Below, one piece after another: positions 3,801 through 57,819 of a stretch of DNA of 64,000 nucleotides. The position numbers and the translations under genes are program-made. The DNA lies in assembly GCA_035084275.1 (NCBI GenBank), contig CM068747.1, positions 2,976,001-3,040,000 on the forward strand. Direction: 5' to 3'. Position 1 is the first letter of the stretch; each line of letters starts with the position of its first letter. The notes under the pieces are model-generated. The model did no database searches. It was not told the origin of the DNA and saw only the letters and a program-made list of their open reading frames with translations. This stretch comes from Hydrolagus colliei. Lineage: Eukaryota.

Positions 3801-4133
3801 GGTGTCAAATTTGTGAAAACAATAAATTGCTCAACAGACTGAAGCTTTGTGCTTAGCTTCATTTCTCACTCAACCTTTGAAGGTATCTTTATCTACTTAA
3901 GTGATGGGATTTACACACAAAATGCGGTCAATTAACTTTACAGTATATCATGTGATGTGCTTTGAGACATATTGACAACATGATAGAAAGTGCTGTCTCA
4001 AATCCAAGTATTATTATTAAGGTATTGCAACATTCCTTTAGATTTACCGGCTGAGAAATGCTTCATTTGTAAAAGTGGCACCAAAAGGCAAATCACTCGC
4101 TCAGAATCCAGAACACTAATGTGATTTTTACAT

Positions 4134-4139
4134 TTTATT
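4134..4139 (-). terminator. Likely polyadenylation signal of the RPL41-like gene
   Basis: AATAAA on the - strand about 190 nt after the stop codon. Confidence 0.6.
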
Positions 4140-4327
4140 CTTTACAACCACTGTAAAGGTCCAATACTAGAACAGTCCAAGTCTATCCAGATCTTCTGAT
4201 GACAAGTATCTGATACGCCTTCATGAAATGGTCCCAGCACTAGAATTGAAGTGAAGATTCCACAGTCCATGGCCATTCAACAAAGTCTGTGAAGTACACC
4301 TTCCGCAGTAGTAAATGAAACGTTAGA

Positions 4328-4370
4328 TCATCTGCACCTCTGCCTCATCTTTCGTCTCTTGCGCTTAAGC
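4328..4370 (-). CDS. RPL41: RPL41-like coding exon 3 ([14 protein letters not shown])
   Basis: CATTACAG|G CTT AAG CGC AAG AGA CGA AAG ATG AGG CAG AGG TGC AGA TGA. Confidence 0.93.
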
Positions 4371-7300
4371 CTGTAATGGGATTAAGATCATGTTAAAAAT
4401 CTCCACAATCTTCAGGACAATATGTAAATAAAAGCAGCCTAAAATAAGGTTGGTTAGCAGCAGAGCAGTTCAAATTCTTTACACACCAATAAAAAAAACG
4501 GAGAAGCCGCAATAATTTCTAATAAGCTTCAGTAAACATGCAATTTTAACTATTCGATCAATTTCTTGCTGAACTTTCCTCAAAATATTATGATTTTTGT
4601 GATGTTTGAATCATAGAATCAGAGCACAAAAGGAGGTTGTTCTGCCCATCGTGTCTATGCCGGATCTTTGAAAAGAGCTGTCCAAATCAATTCCACTCCC
4701 CCGCTCTTTTCCCATAGCCCTGCAAACTTGTCCTCCTCAAATATATATCTGCGCCTCTCTTAAAACTTGTTATCAATTCAGCTTCTATGTTTTCAGGCAA
4801 TGCATTTTTTGTACCTTAAGGCTGCACAGAGACATTATTTAAAAATAGTCGGAATAAAGAAGTTTTTATTACTATTAAAACATTTATAATCAGTTAAAAC
4901 AAAAACAGACAACAAAAACACAACTTCGATTTATACAGCGCCTTCCACGCCAGACGGCGTCTCAGAGCGCTTCACAATAACGGATCCCGGGACCGAGCCA
5001 AGGGCAGGGGAAGAAAGGTGACCAAAGTCACGGTCGAAGAGAAAGGTCTTCAGCAAAGCTATGCTGAGTTATGCTTAATATTTAACTACCCATGCAGCTT
5101 TGTCTGGACATTATAGAAGTAAAATAAAACTCTCCCTGATATAAATACAGAATTTAAAAAAAAATGCTTTTAATTTAACTAATGTAAAAAACAAAAGGCA
5201 AAATAAACATTTCACTGTTCAGTACAGTGCCTGAACACAATTTCTACGCATGCATGGGGGAGAAGAGAACATGTGATTATTGGGGAGAGAATCAGGAGCG
5301 TGGAGGCTCATATGGAATACAAACATTAACATAAGGCAATTTGGGCTCAATGTTTTTCATGCTTCTGTGTATGTGTAATTCTCTTTCAAATAATGCATTA
5401 TTGAGTAGAAGACAGTGCCTCTGTGAAATTAAAGACTGATGTCTTACAGTGTTCTCCACAACCTGAAATTAAATTAAAAGGTGCTCCAGCTGTGTTCAAC
5501 ATCAGCAGCATAATGTCAGAGCACTTTGTCGCCACGTCACACGCATGCACGTACGCACACAGGCACGGGGCAAACTCTCACTCCACACTCAATCATGTCA
5601 TGATCAGCAAATTCTAAAAACAAGACCTGTGAGTGTGACTAGTGTGAGGCACAATAAAACTTGACAGGGAGAGAGAAAACATCCATAAAAAGTCTTTGAA
5701 ATTTGTCATCATCAATCCTTAAGTTAGTGTTTTGGATATTATAATGTTTCTTTGAATCTCTGAAATAGTAAAACATAACCTGTGCTTTTAAAGTTAAGTG
5801 ATATCATGTTCAGTTGCATTGAAACCATTGTGACAACTTTGTGAATCCATTTTCAACAGTAGCAAGGGAATAAGGTTGGAATGAGATTTTAGAAAAATTG
5901 TGTCTTCAGCAAATAACACATCTTGCAAGATTGGGGGAAGCACATGTGATATTTATATTAAAAATAAAATTGACCTGATATTTAACAGTGTGGGGCACAC
6001 TCCATGATTGGTATAATATTAGAACTGAAGTTGTCCTTAAACATCTAGCTTCCTCCTCCTCATGCTTGCCCAGGTGTCTGCTGCCACGTCAAATGGAAAC
6101 TCCTGTAGTGGTGGGCCCTCCACAGACACCATTATATGGGCATTTAGGGTCTCCTGCTTCAGGTGGTTCCTCTCCTCGGTCTTAATCCTCTTCAGAGAAG
6201 AAAACCCTCTTTCACAATCTGCTGTGCTCATGGGGATGACCAGGGCGAGTTGTGCCAGCTTTGTTAGAGCTGGCATGGATTTGTCATGTAGCGTTGCAAG
6301 CTGACATAAAGTTGCCTCAAATGTCGACCCCATTTTTGGGTCCCGCTGAACGAGTAATCCCTTGAGTACTTGGTGTTCTCTCCTGGCAGCATCACTATCC
6401 ACAACCTCCGAGTAGTGCTCAATCAACAGTTCCAGCTCTTCAACAGCGAAGTATGCCATATCTTCCACAGAGAGGTTGTGGTGCTTGGCTGGGTCGAAGA
6501 CTGTGCCAAATGCTGCCAGGAGATCAGTCTCAGGAAATCTTGTCTGGAGTTGTTCAACGAGTGCCCTGAGGTATGGAGTGTACACTGTTGTTTTGAATGT
6601 CTTCAGATCCTCTTTTGTGCAGATTATTGGAAATCCTCCTGCACTCATTTCCTCCATTCTGTTCTCCAGAGACTGGAAGTGCCTTCCTGGGTTAGTGAGC
6701 AAAGCGCCTAGTGTGGTGATGGTGGTTTCAATGTCGGATTTTATCCCACACAGATTGAGTGAGTGGGTCTGGAATCGCTTAGAAAGCACTGACAGGAGAG
6801 GCAGGATGTCAGACATCATATGAAGATATGCAACAAATTTCCAGTTGTTCACCTTTCTCAGCAAGCCGGCTGCTTTGTCCTCGCCATTTTCTTCTGCTTC
6901 ATGCTCGAGTGCCATAATGACGAATAACATCAGCTAGAACCAAAACCATCTCCTGCATGGTCCTCAGACGTGTATCCTGTACTGCCGTCCACCTTAAGAG
7001 CGTTCAGGTAGGTGCATCCATTTGCAACTTGAAGCTGGAGAAGGTCTACAAAGGATGTGGTGTGTGATTTCTCCTTCATCAGCCAGTACATGGTACGTAT
7101 AGCTGCAACAAACGGTTGTCTCTCTAGCGTCAATCCCACTTCCAATGCTGCAGCTATGCCACCACGTCTGGCTGATTGCTCTTCATCGGCCTTCACTTTC
7201 ATGGCCACTTGGTGCACTGACATGGCCTCATGGCGCTTGATGCATTGTTCCCGGTATGAAGTACAGGGAGAAGCCATCCATACCCCTCGTTTTGACCTGT

Positions 7301-10275
7301 AGTCGTACTTCGTGCACCACTTGCGGAACATCCCGGTGCCATGTTCGTATTGCAGCCATGGATAGCGCCCCAGCCAACTGTCCCCAAAACCAGTTGTGCG
7401 CTGTTTCTTCGCGCCCTTGGTGTTTTCAGGTCGACTGGGACCACCTTGTCGGGCCTCGTCAGAATCATCGGCGTCGTGATCGACCACGTGAGTTTCATTG
7501 TTTTTAGAACGAAAAAGACTAGTTAATGAACGTTGTTGCTTCTTACTCATCGTGAATTTCGTGAGCGCACATCTAATATTTACTTCTTCTCGTGTCAGCA
7601 CGATGCTAGCCTGGGCGTTGCAGGAACCAAAATTTCTACTATTGTGTAATTCAAATCACACACACACATACACGCACGCACGGGGCAAACTCTCACTGCA
7701 TAGACCACACACTAGACCAGCTATACACATCAGCATGTCAGGTACGCAACACCAAGGAGGTAAGTACATCGGGGATACACACTCCACAACTTCATCCCTC
7801 CTCCCGCCTTACACACATAGTTGCCCCCCACTCCCCACATACACACAGCACAGACTCTCTCTCTGTCTCTTATCTTCCCCGTGCGCCGGCCACTCTCTGT
7901 TTACCATTCTCTCCGCTGAAATAATCCTTCTGACAAATATTTTCCAAACATGTTTAGAAAAATTATAACGTGTCTGGAAATTTAATTTGTGTCGGCCCTA
8001 AATTTAAACGTGTCGGCCCAACACGTCAAAAGCGGTCGTGGAGAACACTGGTCTTAATTAGCACTAAAGATAAACCCAAACCATCTACGACCATCGGCAA
8101 CAAAAAAAAATGCAGAAAGTAATTCCTGCCACCCTTCACAAAAATACATTGGCTTATTATGTAAAGCAGGAATTCTAGGAGACTTGACAAAACATTGTAC
8201 ATTACCTGCGCATACGCTTCTTTCTCCACTGGAAAACAAACAAAAACATCAATTAAAATTATCACATTATATATGCAATGTTCATGCAAAATTGACTTAT
8301 CCGGTATCCTTCCACCTGATCTAGCCGCGCACCTTATCAGGTCTTCGAGACGTCTCAAAGCCTTTCACAAAATAATAACACTGCAAATAAAGTGAATTGA
8401 CTTGTATTATTTTGTGGGTGAAATGAAACCAGGCAGCCATATTGTGTGTGTCTGCGTGAGATTTTCTGTGTGTGAGTCTCACTTCTGCACCCTAAAAAGA
8501 AAGAAAAATCTTCCAACAAGTTTCAGATGCCAAGGATTACAGCAAATTACATTTGCTCACACACAAGNNNNNNNNNNNNNNNNNNNNNNNNNNNNNNNNN
8601 NNNNNNNNNNNNNNNNNNNNNNNNNNNNNNNNNNNNNNNNNNNNNNNNNNNNNNNNNNNNNNNNNNNNNNNNNNNNNNNNNNNNNNNNNNNNNNNNNNNN
8701 NNNNNNNNNNNNNNNNNNNNNNNNNNNNNNNNNNNNNNNNNNNNNNNNNNNNNNNNNNNNNNNNNNNNNNNNNNNNNNNNNNNNNNNNNNNNNNNNNNNN
8801 NNNNNNNNNNNNNNNNNNNNNNNNNNNNNNNNNNNNNNNNNNNNNNNNNNNNNNNNNNNNNNNNNNNNNNNNNNNNNNNNNNNNNNNNNNNNNNNNNNNN
8901 NNNNNNNNNNNNNNNNNNNNNNNNNNNNNNNNNNNNNNNNNNNNNNNNNNNNNNNNNNNNNNNNNNNNNNNNNNNNNNNNNNNNNNNNNNNNNNNNNNNN
9001 NNNNNNNNNNNNNNNNNNNNNNNNNNNNNNNNNNNNNNNNNNNNNNNNNNNNNNNNNNNNNNNNNNNNNNNNNNNNNNNNNNNNNNNNNNNNNNNNNNNN
9101 NNNNNNNNNNNNNNNNNNNNNNNNNNNNNNNNNNNNNNNNNNNNNNNNNNNNNNNNNNNNNNNNNNNNNNNNNNNNNNNNNNNNNNNNNNNNNNNNNNNN
9201 NNNNNNNNNNNNNNNNNNNNNNNNNNNNNNNNNNNNNNNNNNNNNNNNNNNNNNNCAAAAAAAGGAAAACGCTTTGCAAATGCAACGAGGTCGACGGTTG
9301 GAACCAGTCGCTTAAACAACGTGTGTGTGTGTGTGTGAGTGTGTGCGGGGGGGGTGTGTGTGGGTGAGTGTGTGTGCGGGGGGGTGTGTGTNNNNNNNNN
9401 NNNNNNNNNNNNNNNNNNNNNNNNNNNNNNNNNNNNNNNNNNNNNNNNNNNNNNNNNNNNNNNNNNNNNNNNNNNNNNNNNNNNNNNNNNNNNNNNNNNN
9501 NNNNNNNNNNNNNNNNNNNNNNNNNNNNNNNNNNNNNNNNNNNNNNNNNNNNNNNNNNNNNNNNNNNNNNNNNNNNNNNNNNNNNNNNNNNNNNNNNNNN
9601 NNNNNNNNNNNNNNNNNNNNNNNNNNNNNNNNNNNNNNNNNNNNNNNNNNNNNNNNNNNNNNNNNNNNNNNNNNNNNNNNNNNNNNNNNNNNNNNNNNNN
9701 NNNNNNNNNNNNNNNNNNNNNNNNNNNNNNNNNNNNNNNNNNNNNNNNNNNNNNNNNNNNNNNNNNNNNNNNNNNNNNNNNNNNNNNNNNNNNNNNNNNN
9801 NNNNNNNNNNNNNNNNNNNNNNNNNNNNNNNNNNNNNNNNNNNNNNNNNNNNNNNNNNNNNNNNNNNNNNNNNNNNNNNNNNNNNNNNNNNNNNNNNNNN
9901 NNNNNNNNNNNNNNNNNNNNNNNNNNNNNNNNNNNNNNNNNNNNNNNNNNNNNNNNNNNNNNNNNNNNNNNNNNNNNNNNNNNNNNNNNNNNNNNNCTCC
10001 CTCTCCCCTCCCCAAGGCTTCGTCTCCTCACCTCCCCCCCCCCCCCAGTGTCAGTTGAGGATGAGAGAGAGAGAGAGAGAGGCCGCGGGGTGGTGTGTGG
10101 TGTGGTGTGGTGTGGGGGGGAGTGGCTGGTGATGATGAAGCCAGGCTTCCCTGCAGTCTAGGCCCTGAAGGCCAAACTCCGAAAAATTTTTTACAAGCGA
10201 CTTCAAAATCTTTAGGGTTTAAACAACCCCCCCACACACACACACACCGCCAGCGACACTCACCTTCGCTCTCAT
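4328..10275 (-). CDS. RPL41: RPL41/eL41-type ribosomal micro-protein gene, 3 coding exons: 10264-10275, 8206-8228, 4328-4370; [25 protein letters not shown]
   Basis: 12+23+43 = 78 nt joined by GT-AG introns. 23 of 25 residues match vertebrate eL41 ([25 protein letters not shown]). Exon split is the same as I recall for human RPL41. Confidence 0.93.
4608..4806 (-). mobile_element. CR1 3'UTR fragment
   Basis: Diverged copy of 2555-2750, including the ATCATAGAAT tail. Confidence 0.75.
5447..8050 (-). mobile_element. hAT-superfamily DNA transposon, internally deleted and non-autonomous, in RPL41 intron 2
   Basis: TIRs CAGTGTTCTCCAC(A/G)ACC at 5447-5463 and 8034-8050; GTCTTA on both flanks; transposase remnants inside. 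Confidence 0.92.
6037..7549 (-). pseudogene. Broken ZNF862-like hAT transposase: TTF-type zinc finger and hATC dimerization domain, catalytic core missing
   Basis: N-part WLGRYPWL..KWCTKY..IKRHEAMSVH; frameshift near 6961 (YTSE/TMQEMVLVLADVIR); jumps straight to the C-part ending PMSTADCERGFSSLKRIKTEERNHL. Confidence 0.85.
8206..8228 (-). CDS. RPL41: RPL41-like coding exon 2 (WRKKRMR, 23 nt)
   Basis: TTTGTTTTCCAG|TGG AGA AAG AAG CGT ATG CGC AG|GTAATG. Confidence 0.93.
8568..9255. other. Assembly gap (N run)
   Basis: Run of n. Confidence 1.
9392..9996. other. Assembly gap (N run) flanked by (GT)n/G-rich simple repeats
   Basis: Run of n. Confidence 1.
10264..10275 (-). CDS. RPL41: RPL41-like coding exon 1 (MRAK)
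   Basis: CTCGGC ATG AGA GCG AAG|GTGAGT, consensus donor. Confidence 0.9.
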
Positions 10276-10289
10276 GCCGAGACAGGCCT

Positions 10290-10470
10290 GTTAGAGGCAG
10301 GGGTGAGCTGGTGAGTGTGAGCGGTGGCCGGGTTGAGCGCTGACTGAGCTCAGGTTGATGTCGGCCTCTCCGCCGCCATGTTCCCTGACAACCTCCCGGA
10401 GCCCGGGAACAAGTGCGAAGTCGCGCATGCGCAACCCGTCACCAAAGCCAGGGCAGCTAAACTCCCCCTC
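10290..10470 (-). promoter_or_regulatory. CpG-rich promoter/5' region of the RPL41-like gene
   Basis: CpG-dense; NRF1-type palindrome GCGCATGCGC at 10423-10432; YY1-type AACATGGCGGC at about 10372-10382. Confidence 0.6.
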
Positions 10471-10589
10471 CCCCCCCCCTCCCCCACACAGTGAGTGTGA
10501 CCTGGACCACACTGATGCTGACACGTGTTAATCTGCTTGATGATGTGGCTGTATAAGCGCTCCTGGACGCCCATCTGGCTTAAAGGGCG

Positions 10590-10900
10590 CTGCGATCAAT
10601 GCAACTCCGGGTAACTCTCGCTCACTTTCATCCGGAACTCTGCGGCTCTTTAAGGCCGGTCTCAAGACCCTCCTCTTCAATAGTGCCTTCCCAACTCCCT
10701 CTCTCAGGTCCCGACCTGAATGTTCAGTGCCTTGGGACATCCTCCCACATGAAAAGCGCTCTAAAAATGTAATTTTGTTGGTGATGGCGGTGAGCATATT
10801 TGCAGTCAATCCGTTTTACAGTATATTTTTTCTGTGAAGCGCTTTGACACAGCTTCGATGACACAATGAGAAGTTGTATGAAACGTAAGGACTATTAACC
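10590..10900 (+). mobile_element. L2 3' fragment followed by a SINE tail fragment
   Basis: TTGGGACATCCTCC..GAAAAGCGC..TGTAATTTTGTTG, then TTTACAGTATATT..GAAGCGCTTTGA. Confidence 0.65.
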
Positions 10901-12472: not shown

Positions 12473-12588
12473 TCAGCAGTTCAAACCTAGGTTTGTCCAG
12501 TGTTCTGGGACCATCAGGAAGTACTTGTCCATCGCTTCACAGAATCGCGTTCGGTAAAGTTCTGGAGAGACCACAGTGGGCATTTTTC
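12473..12588 (-). CDS. PIKFYVE: PIKFYVE coding exon 41 (last)
   Basis: [32 protein letters not shown]. Confidence 0.95.
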
Positions 12589-15500
12589 CTATTCAAAAAG
12601 CAGTAATATTCAGTTTAAAAAATGCAACATTGTTTTGTATTCACAATCATATGTTCACCTCCTAAAGTACTAACACCACCAACGGTTTCAAAGAAGTTAT
12701 TATTAAGTTATTGATTTTAAAATCTGCAGTTTGAAATAGTTTAAATCCTATAACATCAGTATTTTATTGGCTTGTTTTTTCCCATTCAGTTTCGTCCCTA
12801 AATTGACAGACAAGACCAGCTGTTAGTACAGGTTGCTTATAACAGGTTGGACCTGCATCAACCTGAAATGAAATACCTCTGGCTTTCAGCAATGACTAAT
12901 CAGCCTCCTGAGCTAAACTATGGTTGACTTTCAGGTTGTCTCCACCAATGTTATATCCTGTGCCTTGTGTGTAGAAAATAATCTGAGCAGCACTTACTAC
13001 ACACAGCTTGAATGTCAAAAAAAACTCCTCAATAAACTAATTTTTTTCCTGATGTCTGGCAAATCTCCCGAAGTTTGAAACAGCTGCTTGTAGCTCAGAG
13101 TTCCCACTCCGTCATCCGGCCCTATGGGTGGAGCTCGGCTGTGTCTGTGGTGGGGCTTCCCCAGCCATTTCTAGGTAGGCTCTAAATACCGGCAAACTCC
13201 AAAATCCGGGAGGTGTTGGGCCCACCTGGGCTGGATTATTCGAGGTTTTACTGTATTAGGTTTGCACTGTATAAGCACGGTACGCTAACCATGAAGAATG
13301 CCATATAACTGCAAGTTGTTGTTGTTCGTGACACATAATAATCCTTGCATCTACCGCCCTAACCGCCCAGCCATCGGTGGCCGGGCGTTCAGCCTCTCTG
13401 CTCCCACACTGTGGAACTCCATCCCGCAGCCCCTCTGCCTCGCTTCCTCTCTTTCCTCCTTCAAGGCCGGTCTCAAGACCTTCCTCTTCGACCGCGCCTT
13501 CGGCTGCCCCACTAACTTTTCCCCCTCTCCCACTCTCCTTCCCCTTCCCCCGCCCCTCCCCCACCTCCCATTCCCCCCGCTCGGGTCCCGACCAGACTGT
13601 TCAGTGCTTTGGGACATCCTCTCGCCGTGAAAAGCGCTATATAAGTGCAATTTTGTTGTTGTTGTTGCATTCGATATAGTACTTTTCACATCTTCTAGAA
13701 TTGTATATTTGAGGGCAAAACAGGACAGCCAATTGCGCACAGCAGTGTCCCACAAACAGTTGTGGATTGAAATGACCAATTTATTATTGTTTTTTTTCTC
13801 TCCAAGGGATTATTATCAGTCATGCCAAGTAAGGAAACTTGCCCAGATTTTGCCCTGCCTGGAATTGAACCCAGGTCTCTCGCTTGCAAGGTAAGTGCTC
13901 CAACCACTGAGCTACGGGACTCCACAAGTACAAACATGTACACACAAATAGATTAGCAATCATTTTGTTAACAGTGACACTTCGTGAAATTTACTGCTGT
14001 GTTTACCCAAGTACAAGATATTATTGTGCACCCCCACCCTCCAAATAGCCAACATTTCCCCAATTTTAGTTGTGGATTGTTGCGAGAAACTCATCTTTTC
14101 AAAAATTGCATGGGATCTTCAGCATCCATCTGCACTGGAACATGGGACGTTAGTTTAACATGTCATCCGTAGGACGCACATCCAACATTGCAACACCCAC
14201 CCCCACTTAAACGTTAGCCTAATTACATAAGTTCAAAGTCTCAAAGTAGGACTTGAACCCACGACTTTCTGACTTAAAGGCAAGAGTTCTATCAACTAAA
14301 TCCAAATGACACTAGTTTAACTGTGGTGGGTATTAATAAATTGAATGTAAACATGTAAACGCATAAATACAAGCATGGCATCTGCACACTTACCCTGTCC
14401 TCCCAAGATTCCTGTAGACTTCACAACCATCTCAAGTTTTTTATCCCACGTAAAAGTTCTGATGTAATCTAAATTGTACAAAACAAGGTGCTGAGAAAAC
14501 AATCTGAGAAAAATAATAATAACAATTTTTCTTACTGCAACAATATTTAAATGTCTGAATCTGATGTGAGTCAATGTGTTTTTAAACACATTTTGCTTTT
14601 CTTCACCAATATTAGTTTGGCTCTGACAGTGCAGGGAACGTTACACTGTGCGACTAAACAATTATTTCACTGTTCAGCAATGCTGATAGTGTGGAGGCAC
14701 ACACAGTGTTCCAACTTCATTTAAAAAAACACTTTCTTTGCAACAGAAATTCCTTTCTCCCTAGCATATTGCTAAAATGTAAAAAATATTGTTAACAATA
14801 ATCTCGAGTTAGGCAGCAAGAATAAAAAGCATTGAACTCGCTTACATTGAATGTACTATATTACTAGATATAAATTAAGAGATTCAATTTAATAATAGTT
14901 AGCATGTCTCACCAATAATTCCAACAACTAGCTCATCAGAAGTATCATCTCGACCCACAAGTAGGGAATAATCTATGATGAGGTGGCTTGAGAGAAAGTA
15001 TGCGTCACTGTGAATGGATGCTCGGAGTACAGCCTTGCAGTGCGAACGAATGTAAAGAGGATGATCACGAATCATTTTTAATAAGTTTTCGTCCAGTAAT
15101 ACCACGTCACATGTCTCCTTTCCAGTTTCTGTCTTAACGTTCCGATTTCGCAAGGAACCCTTTAAATCAAAAACCTGCAAAAAGGAGAAGATCAGTGAGC
15201 GAATAAATAAGTTTTCATAATAACTGTAGAAGTATACATTCAAGCTCCAAGCAGCAAGAATATTTTAACACTGAAACATAGTAGTTTCTTAAACATTGTA
15301 CTGAGATTAGAATGTGACATATAACTCAAGGTATAAGAACAGAATATAGCAACCATTCCATCTTTCAGTATTATAGCATTGCCGACTTAAGCTTGGCAAT
15401 GCTAAAATAGTGACTGGATTTTTGTCAAATTAAACAACTGATCAATCATTGCAATCTTTGTAGTAAATTGTAGGATTATTTCAACGACCCAAGATTTTAA

Positions 15501-18500
15501 CATTACAGATCCCATAACATACAAACATAAAATACATTTCAATTACAAATAGACTATTGCACAATGTGCCTGAAAAGACATGTACCTGAGACATTTTTCT
15601 CCCATAGAAGAGGTTCTCCATAACCAAAAGATCCAGTTTCTTCTCTGTATTGTTTTGAGAGTTTTTGTAGCCTATCCGATAAACCCCCAGAATTTTGGCT
15701 AATGCAGTAGGTCTCTATTATATTTCAGAGTGTGTGTGGGGGGGGGGGGGGGGAAACAGATTTGCAGTTTTAATGCATATTTAATTTGAAAATGTCAGTT
15801 GATTAAACAACATTTTAAGACTATATTTCAGATCATTTAACTCGTAAGTTGCAAACTTGTGAACATAAATAATAGTACACACAATTAATAAACTTCCCAG
15901 ATGCTACAATTCACAACCTTGCCTTAAGTTGAAAGACTGCAATGACCATGTACACAGATATGTTGTTATATCTACAAATACAGAAATTTCACTTTACATA
16001 AAACCTTGAAGCACAGGTTTTACTGTGAAATGCAGTGACTGTGTACATTAACATTCTGAGACATCTCGACAATATGATAACTATCAATTGAAAAGATTAT
16101 TTCTGTTAATGTAATCCGCCAAGTAGTAACTCGTAGAAAGGCAGACATAGAGGTCTCAAGGCCTCTGCTCTTTCGTTTGTCGAAACGCAAGTTTTAAGTA
16201 CATTTTTTGCAAGTTCCTTTATTCCTGGGTTACATACCAATCTAACTGTCAGGCTCCTGTAAATGCCATTGCTGAATTAACTGTGACTGCAGGATATACA
16301 CAACAGTTGGTCAGAGACAAGCCCTCCCAATTTTCTTTCTAGTCAGAAGTATTTGAACCTGCCTCGCTGCATTGCCATGGCTAACATTATGAACACTTAA
16401 TGTATGGAAAATTGTTTCAATGAATTCCATGAGTTTCTTTTTAAATCACCAGTTACACCTTAAACCTAAAAGCACTTTAACTGAAAAGCACTTCAAACAT
16501 TACTTTGTGTGAAACATTTAAATGCTGCCACAGGTTACTGGCTAAAAACAGTGTCATGAGATTATTTTTTAAAAAGCATGGAATCTAGAACAATAGTGAA
16601 TAAGCTCTAATTGCAATCTTTAGGCACACTTTTGCTGAAATAAATCCACAATTTCATATGGACAGTTACCTTTTGCTGAACAGCAGTAGTAATGTAGCTA
16701 AAATAATGGGGAGCAAAATCCAGGAAAGACTGGACTTCTAGACGAGGCATCTGCTTCAGAATAAACCGGTCGTCTGGAAAAGTTAAAGTGAAATAAATTC
16801 TAAACTTCGATGCTTTTGAAAATTATCTTTCATATTAAATCATATCATAACTGAGCTCAAAGTCTAGGCTGACGACATGATGACATTAAAAAAAAGGTGA
16901 TTATGTCCTGGTCAGCAAAGCTCCATTTCATAGGTTGTATGCCTTGTGCTGTTTGTGGGAACTTGTTAGCAAAAATGGCAAAACACTTAAATATAAATTG
17001 GCTAGTGCATTCAGATAACACATTAATCTTTATTAATGTCCTTGCCAACAATCCCTGAATTTCACATCATGACTGTTTGTGGGACATTACTGTGTGCAAA
17101 TTTGGAGTTGAGTTGCAGATCAACCCCAACCTAACAGAATGGTGGAATAAGCTTGAGGGGCTTATTGACCGTTCTTAAACAGTTTTTGCTGGTTTGCCCA
17201 TAAAATGCTCATTTAGTTTACGCCATTGTACATTACATGCTGGGCGGTAATTTGGATTGTGTGTAATTACCCAATTCCTTCTGTTCTCTAGCTTATATCT
17301 ACACTTTTACAATTTTCATTTTGTCCTGAACTTTTGGGAGTTAATAATACAAATGGTTCAATTTTCAACTTTTATCTGTAGTCATTGTTAAATAAGCTTA
17401 TTTCTGTCTCTTCATCACCAATCAAGTCATTTGTAAATAAAGTAATGGGTGAAAAGTAGAAATAAAAATTACTATGTAGATTGTTAGCTCCATTATTATG
17501 GAACCAGTTACAAATTTAACACAATTTAGTATAAAGTATTCAGAGTAATAGACCAGTATCTGGTTTAACAGAACTATACTATTTAATGGTAATGTCTTAT
17601 TAATTTTCTTCCATGACTTACCTTCTGTTGCATAAAAGGCTGCTCCCGATTTTCCTCCGCGAGCTTGCCACGGCACACAGTGAGACAGAGATCGAATGAA
17701 GTCATCTTCGTTGCTTCCCAAAACCACATCTCGCATTTTATGGAATTCTTCAGCATAATAAATCCGGCAATAAAATTTTGCATTTGCATCTGAAAATTCT
17801 GCGCAAAAGTGAAACAATGTGATAAATTGGGAGGAATTGTGATCAAATCTCACTTAATGTAAAGCTATCTCTCCCAACCAAAGTACTTTGCTATTTGACA
17901 TGCATGTAACATTGTATTACAAGAGCTGCACTAAAGTTTAACAAATGACAATACCTGGCAGAGGAAAACAGTAATGCAGTTTGGATAACATTTAGAAACA
18001 ATTCAAAGCTTTTGTTGGCAATCAGCATAAATTGGTTCCTTCCAATGGTTATTTTATAATAAACCTTTTAATTTAATGTTTGGTTTAGTATTTTTCCATC
18101 TTTATGCTCAAACGTCAAATGCCAATCAAAGAGTAATGAACATTTGGTGACAAATGACTTATACTTTTTATACTTTCTCCTCCCATATTACAGTACTTAA
18201 AGACACTGAATAATGCATATGTACACCTCACAAATACACTAGAATGAATGCACTATGCTCCAAGAAATATGTTTCAGAAGCAGTGAGCAATTTGATTTTG
18301 AATACATAATAACTTTGTCAATTGATGGATCAATCTGGTTTTCTTAAAAGTAAACCGTAGTGACAAAAAGGCTAAATGTCCGCCTGTACGAAGACAGAAC
18401 ATAGCAACACAAATGGGTCATTCAGCCTTTTGAGCAATATTACTTGATCTTCACGACCACAGCTTTTAATCCCATCTCCTCACCTTTTCTCTAAATCCCT

Positions 18501-21500
18501 GAATATACTTCCTTCCTTAAGTACCTCTCAACCTTTTAAGAGGTCAATTTCAAATAATTTAACAATCCTTGAATTTGATGCTGGAAAACAACTGATTTAA
18601 AGGCTATGGATAAAAACGTTGACACTGAAGGTGAAGGATTTATTCAAGTTACTGATTTTAAAGGTGATCTCAAGCGCTAAGTCACCTTTCCAAAATTCTA
18701 AATGTCTCTTATTTCCTGGTATCCTCTTGCACTGTTCTATAATTTAGCACCCAGTAAGTGTATTAAATGTAGAAGCATTTTAGTAAATGGGCCTAAATTG
18801 CAAGTTGCTGTACATTCGAAATGCTGCCCTGATCACTTTTATAAGTCAGTGTCAAACAGTAACTACTTCCTTTATTCATAAATCTAGCTGAAAAGACCAT
18901 TCACTACATGTATAAACTTGTAACTGCTCGCATCTGAAGTTTGTGATTGTAATAGTAGTGTAATATATACATGAGTAGTCAGTATCTAAGCCCAGTAACT
19001 TTTTCTCATGGCCACAATAATACTCTTCTCCTCCCCTTCCACAACCTGCCACAGACAAAGATTTAAGCGAGTTATCAGACAGCCCCAAATACTGTCTGCA
19101 ATACTTACGCAGCTCTACGTGTGGGTTTCCCAGCTGTTTCTTTTGTTTATCTCCACCATCACCATCACCTAAAACAATTCCAACACTGAACTAATTAAAA
19201 TACATGGAAAAGCATTACTGGAAAAACAATGCCAACTCATGTTTAGCCTACACAGTATCATTGTTCCTGGATGAATAACAACAATAAATCTTTTTTTTTA
19301 AGGGATACTAAGTGTTAAGAATCAACCAACCAAAAATGAATGTTTAGTCAATGTGAACTGTGATTTCATTTTCATCTGTAGTTATATCTCAAACCTGATG
19401 TGATTAGTATTGCAAACTGATATATGCTGCATGTAACTATAGCTTGAAAATATATTTAGAGAAAAAAAAAGGCAAAAAGAGTCCAGGGTTGTCAAAACAG
19501 TTAGTATTCACCAGACAAGTTGAATATTAAACTCATTCAAGTTAACAAATAGGTTAGCATTATTAGTAAGATAGCAAAGATCTGACAGGATTAAAGATGT
19601 TTTTTCAAGCATCAAGAAATGTTTCCTATATGAAACACCAGATCTATTTATTAATGAGTTTTATTTTTTCTCTCATTAATTTACTTCTGGCGATGATACT
19701 TGGAACTAAATGGAAGCCTCAGTGAGTGCTGGCAAAGCCATTCAGTTGTGTGTCTGTGTCTGCTTGTGGTCCTGTAGGTACAGTGGCAGAGAAAGGAGAT
19801 TATTGCAGTTGGGAACACTGTCGTGTGCAATTGGCTGCTGAATTTTGCCTACAAATATACAGTCAATTCACTTTACAGTATATTCTGTGAAGCGCTTTGA
19901 GACGTCGATAAGATGTGAAAAGCGCTATACCAAATGCAAAGATTATTATTATAAACCCTAAAACCTGATTTTCAGCTTTCATTACAACCTATAAGGCTGA
20001 AGAGCTGAGGTTTCTTTTGGAGGTGGGTCTTTCCAGCAATTCAATGTTCTACTTTTATGTGACATGACACAAGACATTTATTGGTTAATGAACCAGAAAA
20101 CAATGCACTGCAAAGGCTTTTGCCCCTGAAAAAAGTATTTACAAATGTTTTACTTCCATAAATATGCTTTTAAAAGCCTTTTACAATTATGTACCGTACT
20201 TATCCCTAATTTGATTGGCAGAATATTCACAATACATTCATCATGATCTGTAATCTCTGCATTGAATTCATGCTTTGCAGTTATTAGAGTTGATACACAT
20301 CTGCAGTAGTGTAAGAACTGTACAGGCCTTGATGATTGTACCAATTTATTATAGGGACCAATACTGATCTGCTGGAATAGATCACATCATAGTACATAGT
20401 CCTTGTGATGCAATGCAAAATAGTACAATTCTAGATGTTCACAATTCCGTCATATTCCTGCATTTTCAAAAATTGTCATCATGCAAAATATACATGTTGT
20501 ATTTCTTCACCTACACCTCCATTTGCATTGATGCTCAGACTATAAAAACAAACTCAAACTAAAACTTATGAAACTCCAGCTATGTTAAAACTTTCTACAG
20601 AAGTATCACCTTTGCTATATCAAGTAGTATAAATGAACACAATGTCTTCCCCTCCATATTTTTGTTTGTTTAACCTATGCTATTCCCAGCTAAGTCTCTG
20701 AAAGGTAATATGTTTCAAAATTATAGGTAGGAAGCCCTCTTATTTTGCATCTAGCCTCTTCCTCATCATCTAATTGCAAGGTTGAGATCAAGCTCTTGCC
20801 ACATGGAGAAGTGTAGGAGTGAAGCACATCCTACTTCTTCTGCATCTGGATCCTCAGAGCAACTACTCTTATGACAATTAGCATCAAAATGTTTTCTTAA
20901 GCAAATTGGTGGAGGTGGCTGTTCATGTTCAATTTTATTTTGGGATTAGGAGGGAAAAGAAGCAAGGTTACTTTATAAAATAGGCTTAATTACACTTGGA
21001 ATTTGCAAACTTTAATGAAACAAATGTCACCTCCTCCCCCTCCCCCAAAACACAATGACTCAAGCTGGAGAGCTGGCCCACAATCACTGAGCATGATCTG
21101 ATACCTTGCACAATAGGATATTCATATACAAGATGAATAGCAAGCGTCAGTAGACTAGTAATTAATACACCAAAGCCAAACTTCATCTGTCTAATCAAAC
21201 ATCCATAAACCTTTCAGCAGGGGAATTGGACGATCGCAATCCGGAGCAGAAACCCTGGTGTTTTTCCCAGCTGCACTGAGGCTAACAGAAGGATCTCCAC
21301 TACTCCCCCAGATAAAATCAGCAAATTCAGCACACACAAGGAATCAAACATGGGTCCTTCCAGGTCAAATTTCAAAACAGTATAGAAATGAAGTTTGATG
21401 AAAGATGGAAATTTGAGAATTGGAAGAATCTCAATTTAAATATTCTGGCAATCAGACCTAGAAAAGAAATACAAGGCATTTTAAAATTCACTAGAATTGG

Positions 21501-24500
21501 TGAGCGTTTCATTTCATTGCAAAATAATTGTCAATGCTCTTACAAAAAAAACAGAAAAATCCACAAGAAAGATGCAATAACAGCGCCAAAGAGAATGGAA
21601 GCTATTTGTGCCAATTTAAAACTAATGACACATCTGGACGACATAATGTCTGGAATTCATTCCGAGTGGCTGCTACAATTCACAGCAAGTAAATGACAGC
21701 ACTGCTGGGCGAACAAAGCAGGTTCTTTGCTAGAAGCTGCTTTGTTCGTCCAACAGTACTGTCCAAAATATCTTGAAAGAGTTCCAAAATATCTTGAAAT
21801 TTTTTGCAACAGAGAAAGGAAAAGTATAATTTGTCAGGAACAGAGACATCCAAGAGAAACATAAATTATAATTCTAAAAGGTTTAGTGCGTCACAGACTG
21901 GCAGTTAACTGTACCTTGCAACTCTGCAGCATGATTCTCTGCCCCTTCTTTCCCTGATTGTGTGACCTGGTAATAAGCACTATCTGCACCTCGTAAAGTC
22001 TCTTTTCTCTGTATGGACAGATCAGGGCTTCTACCCCCTGAACCTCGGAAAAATGACAAAACGCCAGATGTCTTTCTTGCTAGAAAAGAGCAAGAACATT
22101 TTTTTTATAATTTCTAAAATGAATCCTAATGATATTTGCATAGAAATAAAAGAAGTAAGCCAGCAGCACTCAAAAAATCAGTGGTGCTGCTGAACAAGAT
22201 CACTGGAAAGCTGGTACCTCTAATGTATATCTTAAACACTTTCAACCATGAACTTACATTGTTGGTCAGAGTCAGAGCTACGATTCCCTTGGTTACTGCT
22301 GCTCTCTAGCTGCCTCGCAGGGCTATTGGTCTTAGTCCTGTCCACACTATTGAAAAACAGGGAGCGAAGAAATTGAAACATCTTTATAATAAAGGGAACG
22401 GTAAATGCGCAACATACACAGAATTATTCAAAATCAATGCAAAAGCAATAAACAAAATGTACTATAATACCATGGAAGACACTGAAAATGGAACTAAATG
22501 TGGTGTGAACAGTGGAACGCAAATTAAGAGGGAAAACCCATAGTCCCAAACTAATTTGATGCTGACTCTGGACGATATTTATAAAGTTGACTTTAACGAA
22601 TGACAACAACAAAATTACATTTGCATAGCACCTTTCACATCGGGAGGATGTCCCAAGGCACTATACAGACAGTATTCCTGACCAATCAGCCTCAGAATGC
22701 AGTTGCAGATCATTAGACCAGTCTATGCAAATTGGTGACATTCATTAGATAACACCACAATCTGTCTTCAGAGCCTTCCAGTTCCACAAAGTATTCCCTT
22801 CTTTTACCCCCCCCAATTACTTTGCCTGTTGTGCTCCTTCGTCACTGCCATTCTTCACATATTCTCCTCCAAGGTCTTCTAAAGTATTCTTATATTCTTT
22901 GCAGCTATAGAAAATATTATTTAAAACAAAGAAATTAAATTTTTAAAAATTTACTGGTGTATGTGTTCAGGCAAAAGAGAAAACATGATTTAGAACCGGA
23001 GTACCTGAGTGCAAATGCTATGATGGAGCTTGGCTCCTTCTCACACACTGGAATTGGTACACGCTCATGTTCCCACATAAGATAGTGCTTATCTGGATCA
23101 CTGTTTAAAAATAAAAACAGGATTACATGACCATCATATTGGCAACATATCACAAGTTGTTGCAATTCATTTTTGCAGCCCACCAATTGGCAGTTTTCAA
23201 CACTCAATATAATAATTCTTAGCCATTCGTTACTTTTTTTGGTCAGCTGTGTCTGCCACATGTGGCACTGTGCTTAAGAATATCAAACTAAGCTGAAATT
23301 TCCATACAACCCACATATTCTTGGAAATCTCAGGAATAGATTGTTGGAATAGAATGCACACTCTCTCCCTGGAGAGACGCATCCTTCTTACCTAATTCCG
23401 AAAAGCAAAGGTTGGCAAGAGCCAAGCCTCTGGGATCTCAGAGGCAAAGAACCTTCCTCTTCAGAAGACATCTTAAAGCACTACACAGGATGTACTGTAA
23501 AGTGCAGTGACTGTATTTGTTGGCAAACAATGGCAACTCATCTGTGCAAAGCAATGATGCATAACAGTTCCAATATGAATGTCCAATTCTATTTGGGGAA
23601 TAATTGGCCAGGACACCAGAAGAAACCCATTTTCATTTTGAATAGTGTTATGGGTTCTTAAATTAGCATCTGAATAGGCCGATGAGAAAGGCTGACATAT
23701 GTTTTTAAATGGAAATTAAATTATGTGAAGAATATTACCAAACATAAAATGTAATAGTACATTTGAATATTCAACATATGAAGAATACAGGCCAAAAAAA
23801 AAGTCCTGAATGAGTGTCTCGACAGCCTTTATCTTTTGCTGTAAATATTATGGAAGCGTCAATGCTAAAGTAGGGGAAGGAGGAGGATGTAAATATAGCT
23901 AGTTTGCTCTTTGGAGTGGTATGATTTGTGGCTGTACTTTTGTGAGAAGTCTTTCACGGACAACCTTTGTGTAGATATCTTACATTCTGAAATAAAACAC
24001 CTCATTGTAAATGTCAGAATTTTACATTTTTTGGGCAGAAATTAGAATTAACATGTCTATATTTTGAAAAAAATAACTTGCATAATATTTAAGTATAAAT
24101 TTAAAAGAACTTACAAGGGAAATGGAATGGGATTATAGCTGTTTCCAGGAAGTAAGTTGGCAAAAATAGCCTTCATTGTTGACTTTTCTTTCACTTGACT
24201 GTCACAGGAACCCAGCAAGTGTCCATCATAGGTATCTGTAAAGATTCATCATAACATATTGCAATGAGAAACTCTAACAAACACGTAACAGGCTAAACAA
24301 CATTTAATTTTGAAAACAAAAACCATAGAAATACAGTACAATTCGCATAATGCCTATCTTTATAAATCATATAATTGTCTAAATCATACCAAGTCCCATT
24401 CAGTTTCCCATCAAAACCACTTTGATTTCTGTGTATTTGTTGTAGTTATCATCCTATAACTTGTAGCATTGCTCCGCTATTCTGTATTACTTCTGAACCT

Positions 24501-51618: not shown

Positions 51619-51634
51619 CTCATCCACCTTAATA

Positions 51635-51812
51635 GAACAACAACAAAGTTACATTTGTATAGCGCCTTTCACGTCAGGAGGACATCCCAAGACGCTGGAT
51701 ATCCAATGTTTCAGACGCGAGCTGGGCTGGGGGACAGGGAGGATGGAGGGAAAGGGGGGATTTGGGGTGACCATCGAAGAAAAGGGTCTTGAGGTGGGAC
51801 TTGAAGAAGGCT
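51635..51812 (-). mobile_element. L2-type 3' fragment abutting the PIKFYVE acceptor
   Basis: (CAA)n-ACATTTGTATAGCGCCTTTCACGTCAGGAGGACATCCC. Confidence 0.75.
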
Positions 51813-52969
51813 AGGGAGGGGGAGGGACTGTTATTGATATAACAACGACAACAAAATTACATTTGTATAGTGGCTTTCTTGTTAATAATAGCATCATAAA
51901 CTGAATAGATCCTCTGCTGAATAACATTACACCTATAGCAACTGTGGGATGGTACTTTCTTGTTCTTGAAAAGCCCTTTTTGTTAAGTAAAATGAATAAT
52001 AGCATGCCGCTAAGCCTAATGAAATATTCTGAATTCCTGGGTTCAAGCAATAATACAATTCAATAATTTTAAAAAATGGAAGGTGGCAGACCAACAACTG
52101 CTTAAATACCAGATTTCTACCATTGGGTTTTACAATTAGGAGAGAGAGATGTGGAATGGATGCAAAGTATTGAATCAAAATGAACATGGTCATAATAGAA
52201 CAGATGCAGTTGCCTTGATCCCCTCTAGTCCCTCTGAAAGATATAATAGTTTGGAACCAGAGACTGATTGAATCCAGAAGTAGATGTTTTAAAATATTTC
52301 TGGTCTGTATAAAATACATGTTCACTGACATGCATCCTGCTTTCATGCTCCCTTTTAAGAATAAGCTGATCTGAGAAGTAAGGAAAAGCCTTTTGAATGT
52401 TATACAGTATTCAATTTGTTAAATTCATGGTGATGTTTGGCCTCATGAACCTTTCCCCTTCAGCAAGTATTCTCAATAAAAAATACTCTTCCCTGTGTTC
52501 CTGATAATATTTTTTTCCCTGCACTATGCTGCATCATCCACATAACACCCTTCAGAAAAAGATGTGAAAGTCAGATTGTAATTTTATCTCCAGCCTGCAA
52601 AATTGTTGTACAATGCTACAATTAAGCAGGAGACACCATAACTTAATGACACAAATCAGACTCTATCTGCTTCTCCAGCCCCTGAGGAAGATTAGATTTG
52701 CTTCAGCTCCCTAGAGCGTGATTCATTCACTGAGCTCCATTACAAACGATCCATCTACAGTCAAAGCACGCGCCAAAAGGTGAATCACAGAAATTAATGC
52801 AAAAGTCAAAAGTTTTTTTTTCAACCTATGGTTGAATCTTTAGCTCCCACCAGATCAATGATTAGCAGCTGCACTCTCCTAACCAAGCCTGGAGGAAGAA
52901 TACATTGACATTATTTTACATGTATTTTATACTGGCCAGAAATATTTCCAAACATGTTAATAAATGGAA

Positions 52970-53185
52970 AAAACACACAAAATACTGCAAATGCTGGAAA
53001 TCTGAAACAAAAGCAGCAATTGCTGGTAACACTCAGCAGGTCAGGCAGCATCTGTGGAGAAAGGAAAAGTGAGCCAATGTTTTGGATTCATGACCTTTCG
53101 TCGTGCACCCGAAACGTTGACTCACTTTTCCTTTCTCCATAGATGCTGCCTGACCTGCTGAGTGTTCCCAGCGATTGCTGTTTAT
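52970..53185. mobile_element. Palindromic Penelope-like element remnant
   Basis: About 80-bp inverted arms ACACTCAGCAGGTCAGGCAGCATCT..AGATGCTGCCTGACCTGCTGAGTGT; CGAAACG next to the loop; family assignment from memory of shark repeats. Confidence 0.6.
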
Positions 53186-53192
53186 GTGAATA

Positions 53193-53408
53193 CAATGAAA
53201 GCCTGTTTATCCGGCACCCTCGGGACCTGGCCAATGCCGGTTAAAGCTCCTGCTGGATATTTGGCCGAAAACACAAAAAATAAAAAGAAATGCAATTTCA
53301 GTGCATTTTTCCAGATAAATTCCGGTTAATTAAATGCGGACTTCTTTTGCGATGCCGGTTATATGGAAGTTTCTGTTGATCGGGTGCTGGATAAACAGGT
53401 TTTTACTG
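53193..53408 (+). mobile_element. Same MITE family, copy 3
   Basis: TA-CAATGAAAGCCTGTTTATCC..GGATAAACAGGTTTTACTG-TA. Confidence 0.85.
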
Positions 53409-57780: not shown

Positions 57781-57819
57781 AGCCACAACAGAATGCTTCA
57801 GGCGCAAAGGCTCTAAACT

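What the first reader, a model, noticed from the sequence alone, without database searches (positions are those of the whole stretch)
4328..10275. Hidden intron-containing 25-aa RPL41/eL41-type gene next to PIKFYVE: candidate retained paralogue (ohnologue)
Seen: three micro-exons (12, 23 and 43 nt) spread over 6 kb splice by GT-AG into an intact eL41 ORF, with an upstream CpG island and a downstream AATAAA. The introns rule out a processed pseudogene. Known: human RPL41 is on 12q13 near ERBB3/IKZF4, while IDH1-PIKFYVE is on 2q34 near ERBB4/IKZF2, and the two regions are paralogous from the vertebrate genome duplications. Inference: this may be a second, duplication-derived eL41 gene lost in mammals and easily missed by annotation pipelines because of its size.
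Basis: partly seen in the sequence, partly recalled or inferred. Interest (0 to 1): 0.85.

Follow-up and report, generated by a model that had tools for sequence, protein, structure and literature searches.

The report
Intron-containing eL41 gene beside PIKFYVE
A complete three-exon gene for the smallest ribosomal protein (eL41, 25 residues) lies just downstream of PIKFYVE in this chimaera-like fish, and whether it is the animal's only copy or an extra ancient duplicate could not be tested here.

Summary
Three minus-strand micro-exons (10275-10264, 8228-8206, 4370-4328; 12, 23 and 43 nt) have consensus GT-AG borders. Exon by exon they read MRAK / WRKKRMR+split Arg / [13 protein letters not shown]-stop. 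By eye that is 23 of 25 residues identical to the human RPL41 peptide printed in PMC12727911. Only the last two residues differ.

Each exon pattern is unique in the 64 kb window. One of only three CpG-island-like blocks in the window sits just upstream of the ATG. An AATAAA lies about 190 nt after the stop. Both N runs fall inside intron 1, so the frame is unaffected, but nothing verifies that exon 1 joins exon 2.

The neighbours are PIKFYVE and IDH1. Unchecked scan notes place ERBB4 about 0.7 Mb away. This mirrors RPL41-ERBB3 on human 12q13, which favours an origin in the vertebrate genome duplications.

It is a real eL41 gene, and its status as a second paralogue is undecided at about 45%.

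The parts
10264..10275 (-). Coding exon A (12 nt): ATG AGA GCG AAG = MRAK. The donor is AAG|GTGAGT. The -3 base before the ATG is G.
   Evidence: unique in the window, 0.03 expected
8229..10263 (-). Intron 1, phase 0. It is 2035 nt as written, of which 1293 are N (two runs), so the length is only an estimate. The 136-nt island between the runs and the 9997-10130 flank are CA/C/G-rich simple sequence.
   Evidence: no contig bridges it
8206..8228 (-). Coding exon B (23 nt): WRKKRMR plus AG of a split Arg codon. The acceptor is tgtttttgtttgttttccAG and the donor is CAG|GTAATG.
   Evidence: An X1 DNA contig covers 8023-8358 with 1 other letter, at intronic position 8250.
4371..8205 (-). Intron 2, phase 2, 3835 nt.
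   Evidence: (Dimer_Tnp_hAT 4.1e-11 in ORF 6040-6933)
4328..4370 (-). Coding exon C, coding part (43 nt): G completing the Arg codon, then [13 protein letters not shown] and TGA. The acceptor is tcttaatcccattacAG.
   Evidence: An X1 DNA contig covers 4301-4687 with 1 other letter, at intronic position 4638.
4110..4327 (-). Inferred 3' UTR (about 190-220 nt) ending shortly after the AATAAA at 4139-4134. The exact 3' end is not known.
   Evidence: no RNA data
10276..10700 (-). 5' UTR and promoter-like CpG-rich block (GC 0.60, CpG o/e 0.63). GCGCATGCGC at 10423-10432 and ATGGCGGC at 10372-10379 each occur only once in the window. Calling them NRF1-like and YY1-like is from recall. An acceptor-like ctctaacAG ends about 15 nt before the ATG, so an upstream non-coding exon is possible. 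The TSS is not determined.
12474..57500 (-). Upstream neighbour PIKFYVE on the same strand. The FYVE exon is at 48906-49112, the large exon at 30699-32006, the PIP5K exon at 14902-15264, and the last coding exon ends with TGA near 12474. About 2 kb separates its stop from the eL41 ATG.
62664..62924 (+). ORF holding the first coding exon of IDH1, head-to-head with PIKFYVE.
   Evidence: best PDB matches are cytoplasmic IDH at 8.9e-16; mitochondrial IDH is weaker at 3.6e-09

Best explanation
This is a functional, intron-containing gene for ribosomal protein eL41 (rpl41 type). It is transcribed from its own CpG-rich promoter about 2 kb downstream of the PIKFYVE stop codon, spliced from three coding micro-exons, and polyadenylated after the AATAAA at 4139-4134.

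The product is a 25-residue, 17-basic-residue helix. Like eL41 elsewhere, it should sit between 18S rRNA helices 44 and 45 and form the intersubunit bridge eB14. It differs from the human peptide only at the last two residues (C-R in place of S-K).

Its position in the ERBB4 / IDH1 / PIKFYVE block, which is the duplicate of the ERBB3 block that carries RPL41 in human, is best explained if it descends from the ERBB4-side copy made by the early vertebrate genome duplications.

Shown: the exon anatomy, the uniqueness of each exon in the window, the neighbours and the CpG block. Inferred: expression, splicing, ribosome incorporation and duplication origin. Open, at roughly even odds: whether a canonical ERBB3-side copy co-exists in this genome.
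For: - The exons and GT-AG borders were read directly and translated exon by exon.
- 23 of 25 residues match the human RPL41 peptide printed in PMC12727911 section 2.3.
- The model has 25 residues and 17 basic ones, as PMC13485352 states for eL41.
- Each exon pattern occurs once in 64 kb, against 0.03, 0.00 and 0.00 expected.
- Only 4 of 247 500-bp windows are CpG-island-like. One abuts the ATG and the other three mark the PIKFYVE and IDH1 5' ends.
- Neighbour identity: the large exon matches a 2085-aa protein (E 1.1e-92) that NCBI names 1-phosphatidylinositol 3-phosphate 5-kinase-like. FYVE and PIP5K domains are present, and the plus-strand exon matches IDH1.
- Paralogy of 2q33-34 with 12q13 (ERBB4/ERBB3, MYL1/MYL6, ZNFN1A2/ZNFN1A4) is given in PMC2235844 Table 1.
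- Scan notes place ERBB4 about 0.70 Mb before the window, and PDE1A and titin 19-20 Mb beyond it, on the same piece. These notes are unchecked.
- An open 78-nt frame plus four intact splice sites would not be expected to survive hundreds of millions of years without selection (inference).
- The DNA run X1 shows 23 single-letter differences and 3 one-letter deletions across the stretch, and none lies in a coding exon.
Against: - There is no transcript evidence. The single run found is DNA-like, since its contigs cover the introns at depth 35-50. None of its 10 listed joints is a predicted exon junction.
- The link between exon A and exon B spans two N runs that nothing bridges. Coverage of exon A itself by X1 is not shown in the pieces listed.
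- No profile test against the eL41 family could be run. The exon peptides are below every tool's minimum length and the joined step was left out.
- The TSS was not determined, and no clean terminal oligopyrimidine tract was identified.
- The gene is long for a ribosomal protein gene (about 6.2 kb with a transposon in intron 2), and its C-terminus departs from one that I recall as nearly invariant. Both would also fit a low-expressed or decaying copy.
- X1 may be the same individual as the assembly, so it is not independent.
- The ERBB4 distance rests on unchecked AI notes.
- That IDH1-PIKFYVE lies at 2q33.3-q34 in human is recalled, not taken from a call.
Confidence: 0.65

Rival explanations
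1. Second copy. The genome also has a canonical ..SK rpl41 in the ERBB3/PA2G4/ESYT1 block. The gene here is an extra, diverging duplicate retained in chimaeras and lost in bony vertebrates, possibly with restricted expression.
For: - The position mirrors RPL41-ERBB3.
- The only two substitutions fall at a C-terminus that I recall as S-K from yeast to human, which fits relaxed or altered constraint on a duplicate.
- The gene is long and carries a transposon.
- Hidden second eL41 genes have a precedent: mouse Gm10076 (bioRxiv 10.1101/2025.03.17.643322).
Against: - No second copy was seen, and none could be looked for. No tool here searches this genome, and the scan's notes hold no rpl41, ERBB3, PA2G4, ESYT1 or IKZF4 entry. 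Those notes cover only 847 windows.
- Retained ribosomal protein duplicates from the vertebrate duplications are few (recalled).
- The protein is still 23/25 identical and has its own CpG block, as a main copy would.
Confidence: 0.45
2. Only copy. This is the species' sole, housekeeping rpl41. Either the ERBB3-side duplicate was lost in this lineage while bony vertebrates lost the ERBB4-side one (reciprocal loss), or the single gene moved.
For: - The ORF is intact, the splice sites are consensus, and the 5' block is CpG-rich with housekeeping-type motifs.
- In the 4301-4500 bin the summed depth equals that of one contig (49.8), so X1 holds no other copy at 95% identity or more over exon C and its flanks.
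- A scan note reports a possibly decaying HoxC cluster on another piece (unchecked). That hints the 12q13-like region may be eroding.
Against: - A sole copy under full constraint would be expected to keep the S-K end.
- The depth argument says nothing about an old paralogue with different UTRs and synonymous sites.
- A random relocation landing within 1 Mb of ERBB4 would be a coincidence.
Confidence: 0.4
3. Silent or decaying relic, or a recent lineage-specific segmental copy, that contributes little or nothing to ribosomes.
For: - No RNA evidence exists.
- The C-terminus is altered.
- Intron 2 carries a transposon, and intron 1 contains assembly gaps.
Against: - All 25 codons, the stop, four splice sites, the poly(A) signal and the CpG block are intact.
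- No stop codon or frameshift is present.
- Both substitutions are conservative (Ser>Cys, Lys>Arg).
Confidence: 0.1

Closest known systems
Canonical vertebrate RPL41/eL41 gene (human 12q13.2, beside PA2G4 and ERBB3)
   Same: - 25 residues, 17 of them basic (PMC13485352).
- 23 of 25 residues identical to the printed human peptide.
- The coding sequence is split by introns. I recall the same two intron positions in the human gene, but I did not check this with a tool.
- Expected role as bridge eB14 between 18S helices 44 and 45.
   Different: - The last two residues are C-R instead of S-K.
- It lies beside PIKFYVE/IDH1 and near ERBB4 rather than ERBB3.
- The gene spans about 6.2 kb and has a hAT element in intron 2.
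Mouse Gm10076, a second Rpl41 gene on a lncRNA (bioRxiv 10.1101/2025.03.17.643322; passages read)
   Same: An eL41-coding locus outside the canonical gene that annotation overlooked or misclassified. It shows that extra eL41 genes can matter for eL41 dosage.
   Different: - Gm10076 was classed as a pseudogene and encodes a protein identical to RPL41.
- The gene here has two introns in the coding sequence and its own CpG block.
- It also differs at the C-terminus and lies in a paralogous chromosome block, which points to a DNA-level, ancient origin.
Vertebrate ribosomal protein paralogue pairs (RPL3/RPL3L, RPL22/RPL22L1, RPS27/RPS27L, RPL7/RPL7L1), as listed in PMC7671327 and PMC13485352 (passages)
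   Same: If a canonical copy co-exists, this would be another ribosomal protein duplicate with slight sequence divergence and possibly tissue-biased use.
   Different: No eL41 pair appears in the passages I read. The 11-species survey (PMC7671327) has no cartilaginous fish (0 occurrences of 'shark' or 'Callorhinchus').
Yeast RPL41A/RPL41B duplicates from the yeast genome duplication (recalled). Two yeast papers hold 'rpl41' and 'ohnolog' in the listing; I did not read them.
   Same: eL41 genes retained in duplicate after a whole-genome duplication.
   Different: It is an independent duplication event in fungi, and I recall the two yeast proteins as identical.

Membership tests
eL41 (RPL41) ribosomal protein | 25-residue peptide, about two thirds Arg/Lys (17 basic) | tested here: met
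   The exon translations plus the split AG|G codon read give 4+7+1+13 = 25 residues. Counted by eye, 17 are R or K. The definition comes from PMC13485352.
eL41 (RPL41) ribosomal protein | Near-identity to a reference eL41 sequence | tested here: met
   23 of 25 positions are identical to the peptide printed in PMC12727911 section 2.3. The two mismatches are the last two residues.
eL41 (RPL41) ribosomal protein | Match to the family profile (Pfam Ribosomal_L41; name recalled) | not testable with these tools
eL41 (RPL41) ribosomal protein | Transcribed, spliced and incorporated at bridge eB14 | not testable with these tools
Processed pseudogene / retrocopy of RPL41 | Intronless copy of the mRNA, often with a poly(A) tract and target-site duplications | tested here: not met
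   Two GT-AG introns (2035 nt as written, and 3835 nt) interrupt the coding sequence.
Duplicate from the vertebrate genome duplications (ohnologue of the ERBB3-linked RPL41) | Lies in the chromosome block paralogous to the one carrying the canonical gene | tested here: met
   PIKFYVE and IDH1 flank it. ERBB4 is about 0.7 Mb away by unchecked scan notes. ERBB4/ERBB3, MYL1/MYL6 and ZNFN1A2/4 are paralogous between 2q33-34 and 12q13 (PMC2235844). The RPL41-ERBB3-PA2G4 co-location on 12q13.2 rests on recall and on the listing only.
Duplicate from the vertebrate genome duplications (ohnologue of the ERBB3-linked RPL41) | A partner copy exists in the paralogous block of the same genome (needed for 'second gene') | not testable with these tools
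   No tool searches this genome. The scan notes have no entry for rpl41, ERBB3, PA2G4, ESYT1, IKZF4 or 12q13.
Duplicate from the vertebrate genome duplications (ohnologue of the ERBB3-linked RPL41) | Same position in other lineages, and duplication dated to before the split of jawed vertebrates | not testable with these tools
The other locus collections hold viruses, metagenomes and prokaryotes. 25 residues carry too little signal for a tree.

The most novel reading that the evidence does not exclude
Chimaeras keep two eL41 genes dating from the early vertebrate genome duplications. One is a canonical ERBB3-side copy. The other is this ERBB4/PIKFYVE-side copy, whose product ends in C-R instead of the otherwise fixed S-K. 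It would be the first ancient paralogue pair described for the smallest ribosomal protein. It would have been lost in bony vertebrates and missed by annotation, and it could give ribosomes with a variant eB14 bridge next to the decoding centre.
Probability: 0.4. Interest if true: 0.6.

Novelty: new member of a known kind. Interest (0 to 1): 0.4.

Why it matters
eL41 sits at the pivot of subunit rotation beside the decoding centre. Recent work links it to translation fidelity and to the supply of long proteins (PMC13485352). A 2025 preprint shows that mice hide a second functional Rpl41 locus.

An intron-bearing eL41 gene in the ERBB4 block would add a data point on how ribosomal protein duplicates survive genome duplications. 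It would matter in either of two ways:
- If it is an extra copy, it would be a natural variant of bridge eB14 to test.
- If it is the only copy, it would be hidden paralogy: the shark and human 'RPL41' genes would not be strict orthologues.

It also shows concretely that a 25-codon gene split into 12-, 23- and 43-nt exons is easy for pipelines to miss. On present evidence it is a solid small gene call with an open but modest evolutionary question.

Tried and rejected
- RNA evidence. The look-up of sequencing runs (kind rna) on exon C plus the 3' UTR returned 1 run with no RNA on record. Laying it on 4301-10300 showed DNA contigs over the introns and none of the predicted junctions among 10 joints. 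It therefore tests nothing about splicing. It only confirms the letters of exons B and C.
- Protein search with exon C's 17-aa stop-free reading.
- Other species' PIKFYVE-downstream DNA.
- Literature, 10 of 10 searches used:
  - RPL41+PIKFYVE: 2 irrelevant papers.
  - RPL41+ohnolog: 2 yeast papers.
  - rpl41+'elephant shark': 0 papers.
  - rpl41+shark: 4 irrelevant papers.
  - L41+erbB3+Fugu: 0 papers.
  - The exon-C end motif as a string: 0 papers.
  - The Fugu-human synteny paper PMC2447035 is listed as holding rpl41 x3 and erbb3 x4, but only its abstract and references are readable. Gellner & Brenner 1999 (PMC310722) is not held. Fugu ERBB3-RPL41 linkage therefore remains my recollection.
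- Xenopus lead. PMC7671327 took an 'RPL41-like' sequence from translated genomic DNA of NC_030685.1. I recall that accession as chromosome 9, the 2q-like chromosome. The hit may just as well be a retrocopy, so I rejected it as evidence. Its Supplementary Table S1 may bear on this, but supplements were closed and I did not ask for them.
- snoRNA host idea. Rfam gave 3 hits in the window, all tRNA-like and none inside this gene.
- The bacterial promoter/terminator scan on 10200-10700 gave 0 sites and is irrelevant for a eukaryote.
- Upstream non-coding exon. An acceptor-like ctctaacAG precedes the ATG, but I found only weak donors upstream. This is left open.
Full report
**What is there**

On the minus strand I read three micro-exons with textbook splice signals.
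- Exon A, 10275-10264: ATGAGAGCGAAG followed by GTGAGT.
- Exon B, 8228-8206: preceded by a long pyrimidine tract ending in ttccAG and followed by GTAATG.
- Exon C, from 4370: preceded by cattacAG and running to TGA at 4330-4328.

Translated one exon at a time they give MRAK, WRKKRMR and [13 protein letters not shown]-stop. The two bases left over at the end of exon B (AG) and the first base of exon C (G) make an Arg codon. Intron 1 is therefore phase 0 and intron 2 is phase 2.

The total of 25 residues, the count of 17 basic residues and the comparison below were made by eye.

**Is it more than chance?**

I scanned the whole 64 kb window, both strands, with degenerate patterns built from each single exon and its splice dinucleotides. 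Each pattern occurs exactly once.
- Exon A: 0.03 expected, with 3 of 100 shuffles giving at least one hit.
- Exon B: 0.00 expected, with 0 of 100 shuffles.
- Exon C core, even allowing 3 mismatches: 0.00 expected, with 0 of 100 shuffles.

The three hits lie in the right order on one strand. Chance is excluded.

**The N runs**

The two N runs (8568-9255 and 9392-9996) both lie inside intron 1, between the donor at 10263 and the acceptor at 8229. Their unknown length therefore cannot affect the reading frame.

What stays unverified is that exon A and exon B lie on one molecule. The only sequencing run available left 7 of 30 bins (8701-10100) without depth and bridged nothing. The sequence beside the gaps is CA-, C- and G-rich simple sequence, which is a usual cause of assembly gaps. 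I did not try to fill them.

**Family**

PMC12727911 (section 2.3, passage read) prints the human RPL41 peptide. The window's model is identical at 23 of 25 positions. It differs only at the last two, with Cys-Arg in place of Ser-Lys.

PMC13485352 (passages) describes eL41 as follows:
- It has 25 residues, 17 of them basic.
- It forms a single helix between 18S rRNA helices 44 and 45.
- It contacts helix 27 and 28S rRNA.
- Its loss leaves cells and mice viable, with lower fidelity and fewer long proteins.

The model here meets the length, charge and identity criteria.

**Signs of an independent gene**

- Positions 10276-10700 have GC 0.60 and CpG o/e 0.63, against 0.385 and 0.42 for the window.
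- Only 4 of 247 500-bp windows reach GC>=0.55 with o/e>=0.6. One abuts the eL41 ATG, two lie at 57.2-58.0 kb (the PIKFYVE 5' end) and one lies at 61.25 kb (the IDH1 5' end).
- GCGCATGCGC (10423-10432) and ATGGCGGC (10372-10379) each occur once in the window, both within 160 nt of the ATG. Reading them as NRF1-like and YY1-like housekeeping motifs is from recall.
- The only minus-strand AATAAA within 800 nt after the stop is at 4139-4134.
- The TSS is unknown. An acceptor-like ctctaacAG about 15 nt before the ATG leaves room for a non-coding first exon.
- Rfam found no snoRNA in the introns. It gave 3 hits in the window, all tRNA-like SINE heads elsewhere.

**Neighbours**

The same strand upstream carries PIKFYVE.
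- The large exon at 30699-32006 matches 627 proteins at E<=0.001. The best full-length match has 2085 aa, 47% identity and E 1.1e-92. NCBI names it 1-phosphatidylinositol 3-phosphate 5-kinase-like, from a salmon.
- Of 8 ORFs scanned against Pfam, 4 had hits: FYVE at 48906-49112, PIP5K at 14902-15264, a hAT dimerisation domain at 6040-6933, and a sub-threshold zinc finger at 6933-7655.
- PIKFYVE's last coding exon ends near 12474, about 2 kb before the eL41 ATG.
- The plus-strand ORF at 62664-62924 matches cytoplasmic IDH (IDH1) best, at 8.9e-16. Mitochondrial IDH scores 3.6e-09. There were 46 PDB sequences at E<=0.001.

Unchecked notes of this scan place ERBB4 about 0.70 Mb before the window, and PDE1A and titin 19-20 Mb beyond it, on the same piece. 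That is a human-2q-like chromosome.

**Expression**

Expression could not be tested. The one run found (X1, kind unknown) holds 85% of the sampled words of 4100-4400. When laid on 4301-10300 it proved to be DNA:
- Its contigs cover the introns at depth 35-50.
- None of its 10 listed joints is an exon junction.
- Its 23 single-letter differences and 3 one-letter deletions all lie outside the coding exons.

It confirms the letters of exon B (piece 8023-8358) and exon C (piece 4301-4687). The listed pieces do not show exon A. The run may come from the same animal as the assembly. In the bin 4301-4500 the summed depth equals that of a single contig, so the run holds no second copy at 95% identity or more over exon C and its flanks. 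This says nothing about an old paralogue.

**Orthologue or paralogue**

PMC2235844 (Table 1) lists ERBB4 (2q33.3-q34)/ERBB3 (12q13), MYL1/MYL6 and ZNFN1A2/ZNFN1A4 among families shared by the Hox-linked blocks. That human RPL41 lies beside PA2G4 and ERBB3 at 12q13.2 rests on recall, supported only by co-occurrence in the listing.

A random relocation would be very unlikely to land in exactly the paralogous neighbourhood. I therefore take descent from the ERBB4-side duplicate as the best explanation of the position (inference).

This holds whether or not a canonical copy survives in this genome. If this is the only copy, it is a reciprocally retained duplicate, not a moved orthologue.

The evidence on 'second copy' against 'sole copy' points both ways:
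- The Cys-Arg end, at a terminus I recall as Ser-Lys from yeast to human, leans towards a duplicate under altered constraint. So does the long, transposon-bearing gene.
- The intact housekeeping-type 5' block and the 23/25 identity lean towards a main copy.

I put the second-copy reading at about 0.45, the sole-copy reading at about 0.40 and a silent relic at about 0.10.

**What is in print**

In the 10 full-text searches I ran, no paper links RPL41 with PIKFYVE in a relevant way, none prints the Cys-Arg-ending motif, and none treats rpl41 in sharks.

Two papers show that eL41 genes are overlooked:
- The mouse Gm10076 preprint.
- The 11-species ribosomal protein survey, in which X. tropicalis RPL41 had to be taken from translated genomic DNA. 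That survey's supplementary table, which I could not see, may say more.

**Verdict**

This is a genuine, probably functional eL41 gene in an unexpected but explicable place, so I class it as a new member of a known kind. The attractive claim, an ancient second eL41 gene, is neither supported nor refuted by what could be run. One exon-aware genome search plus any RNA-seq data set of this species would settle it.

Noticed in passing
window 5441-8056 (ORFs 6040-6933 and 6933-7655, minus strand): A hAT-family transposon sits in intron 2 of the eL41 gene, with long open transposase pieces. Pfam gives Dimer_Tnp_hAT at 4.1e-11 and a sub-threshold C17orf113-type zinc finger. X1 contigs show joints 5638>7753 and 5649>7753, which suggests internally deleted copies of the element elsewhere in the genome.
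   Followed up: partly
window 13850-13921 (-), 37769-37840 (+), 48299-48370 (+): Three tRNA-like Rfam hits (37-43 bits) lie inside repeated sequence in and around PIKFYVE. They are most likely heads of tRNA-derived SINEs rather than tRNA genes.
   Followed up: no
window 57251-58000 and 61251-61750: PIKFYVE (minus strand) and IDH1 (plus strand) are head-to-head, with two separate CpG-island-like blocks about 3-4 kb apart.
   Followed up: no
window 4501-5100 and 8301-8500: X1 contig depth is extremely high in these bins (up to about 600,000, against about 40 nearby). These are very high-copy short repeats inside the eL41 introns.
   Followed up: no
window 2740-3273 (-): A 178-aa open piece resembles the C-terminal part of a LINE reverse transcriptase by eye. 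Pfam found no family at E<=0.01.
   Followed up: partly
window 10372-10344 (-), upstream of the eL41 ATG: The ATG inside the ATGGCGGC motif opens a 9-codon upstream ORF ending in TGA. If the TSS lies upstream of it, the mRNA would carry a uORF, or this stretch is removed as a 5' intron (read by eye).
   Followed up: no
literature: PMC7671327, NC_030685.1 (Xenopus tropicalis): A survey took an 'RPL41-like' sequence from translated genomic DNA of this frog chromosome record because RefSeq had no RPL41 protein. I recall the accession as chromosome 9, the 2q-like chromosome. It is worth checking whether it lies near pikfyve.
   Followed up: no
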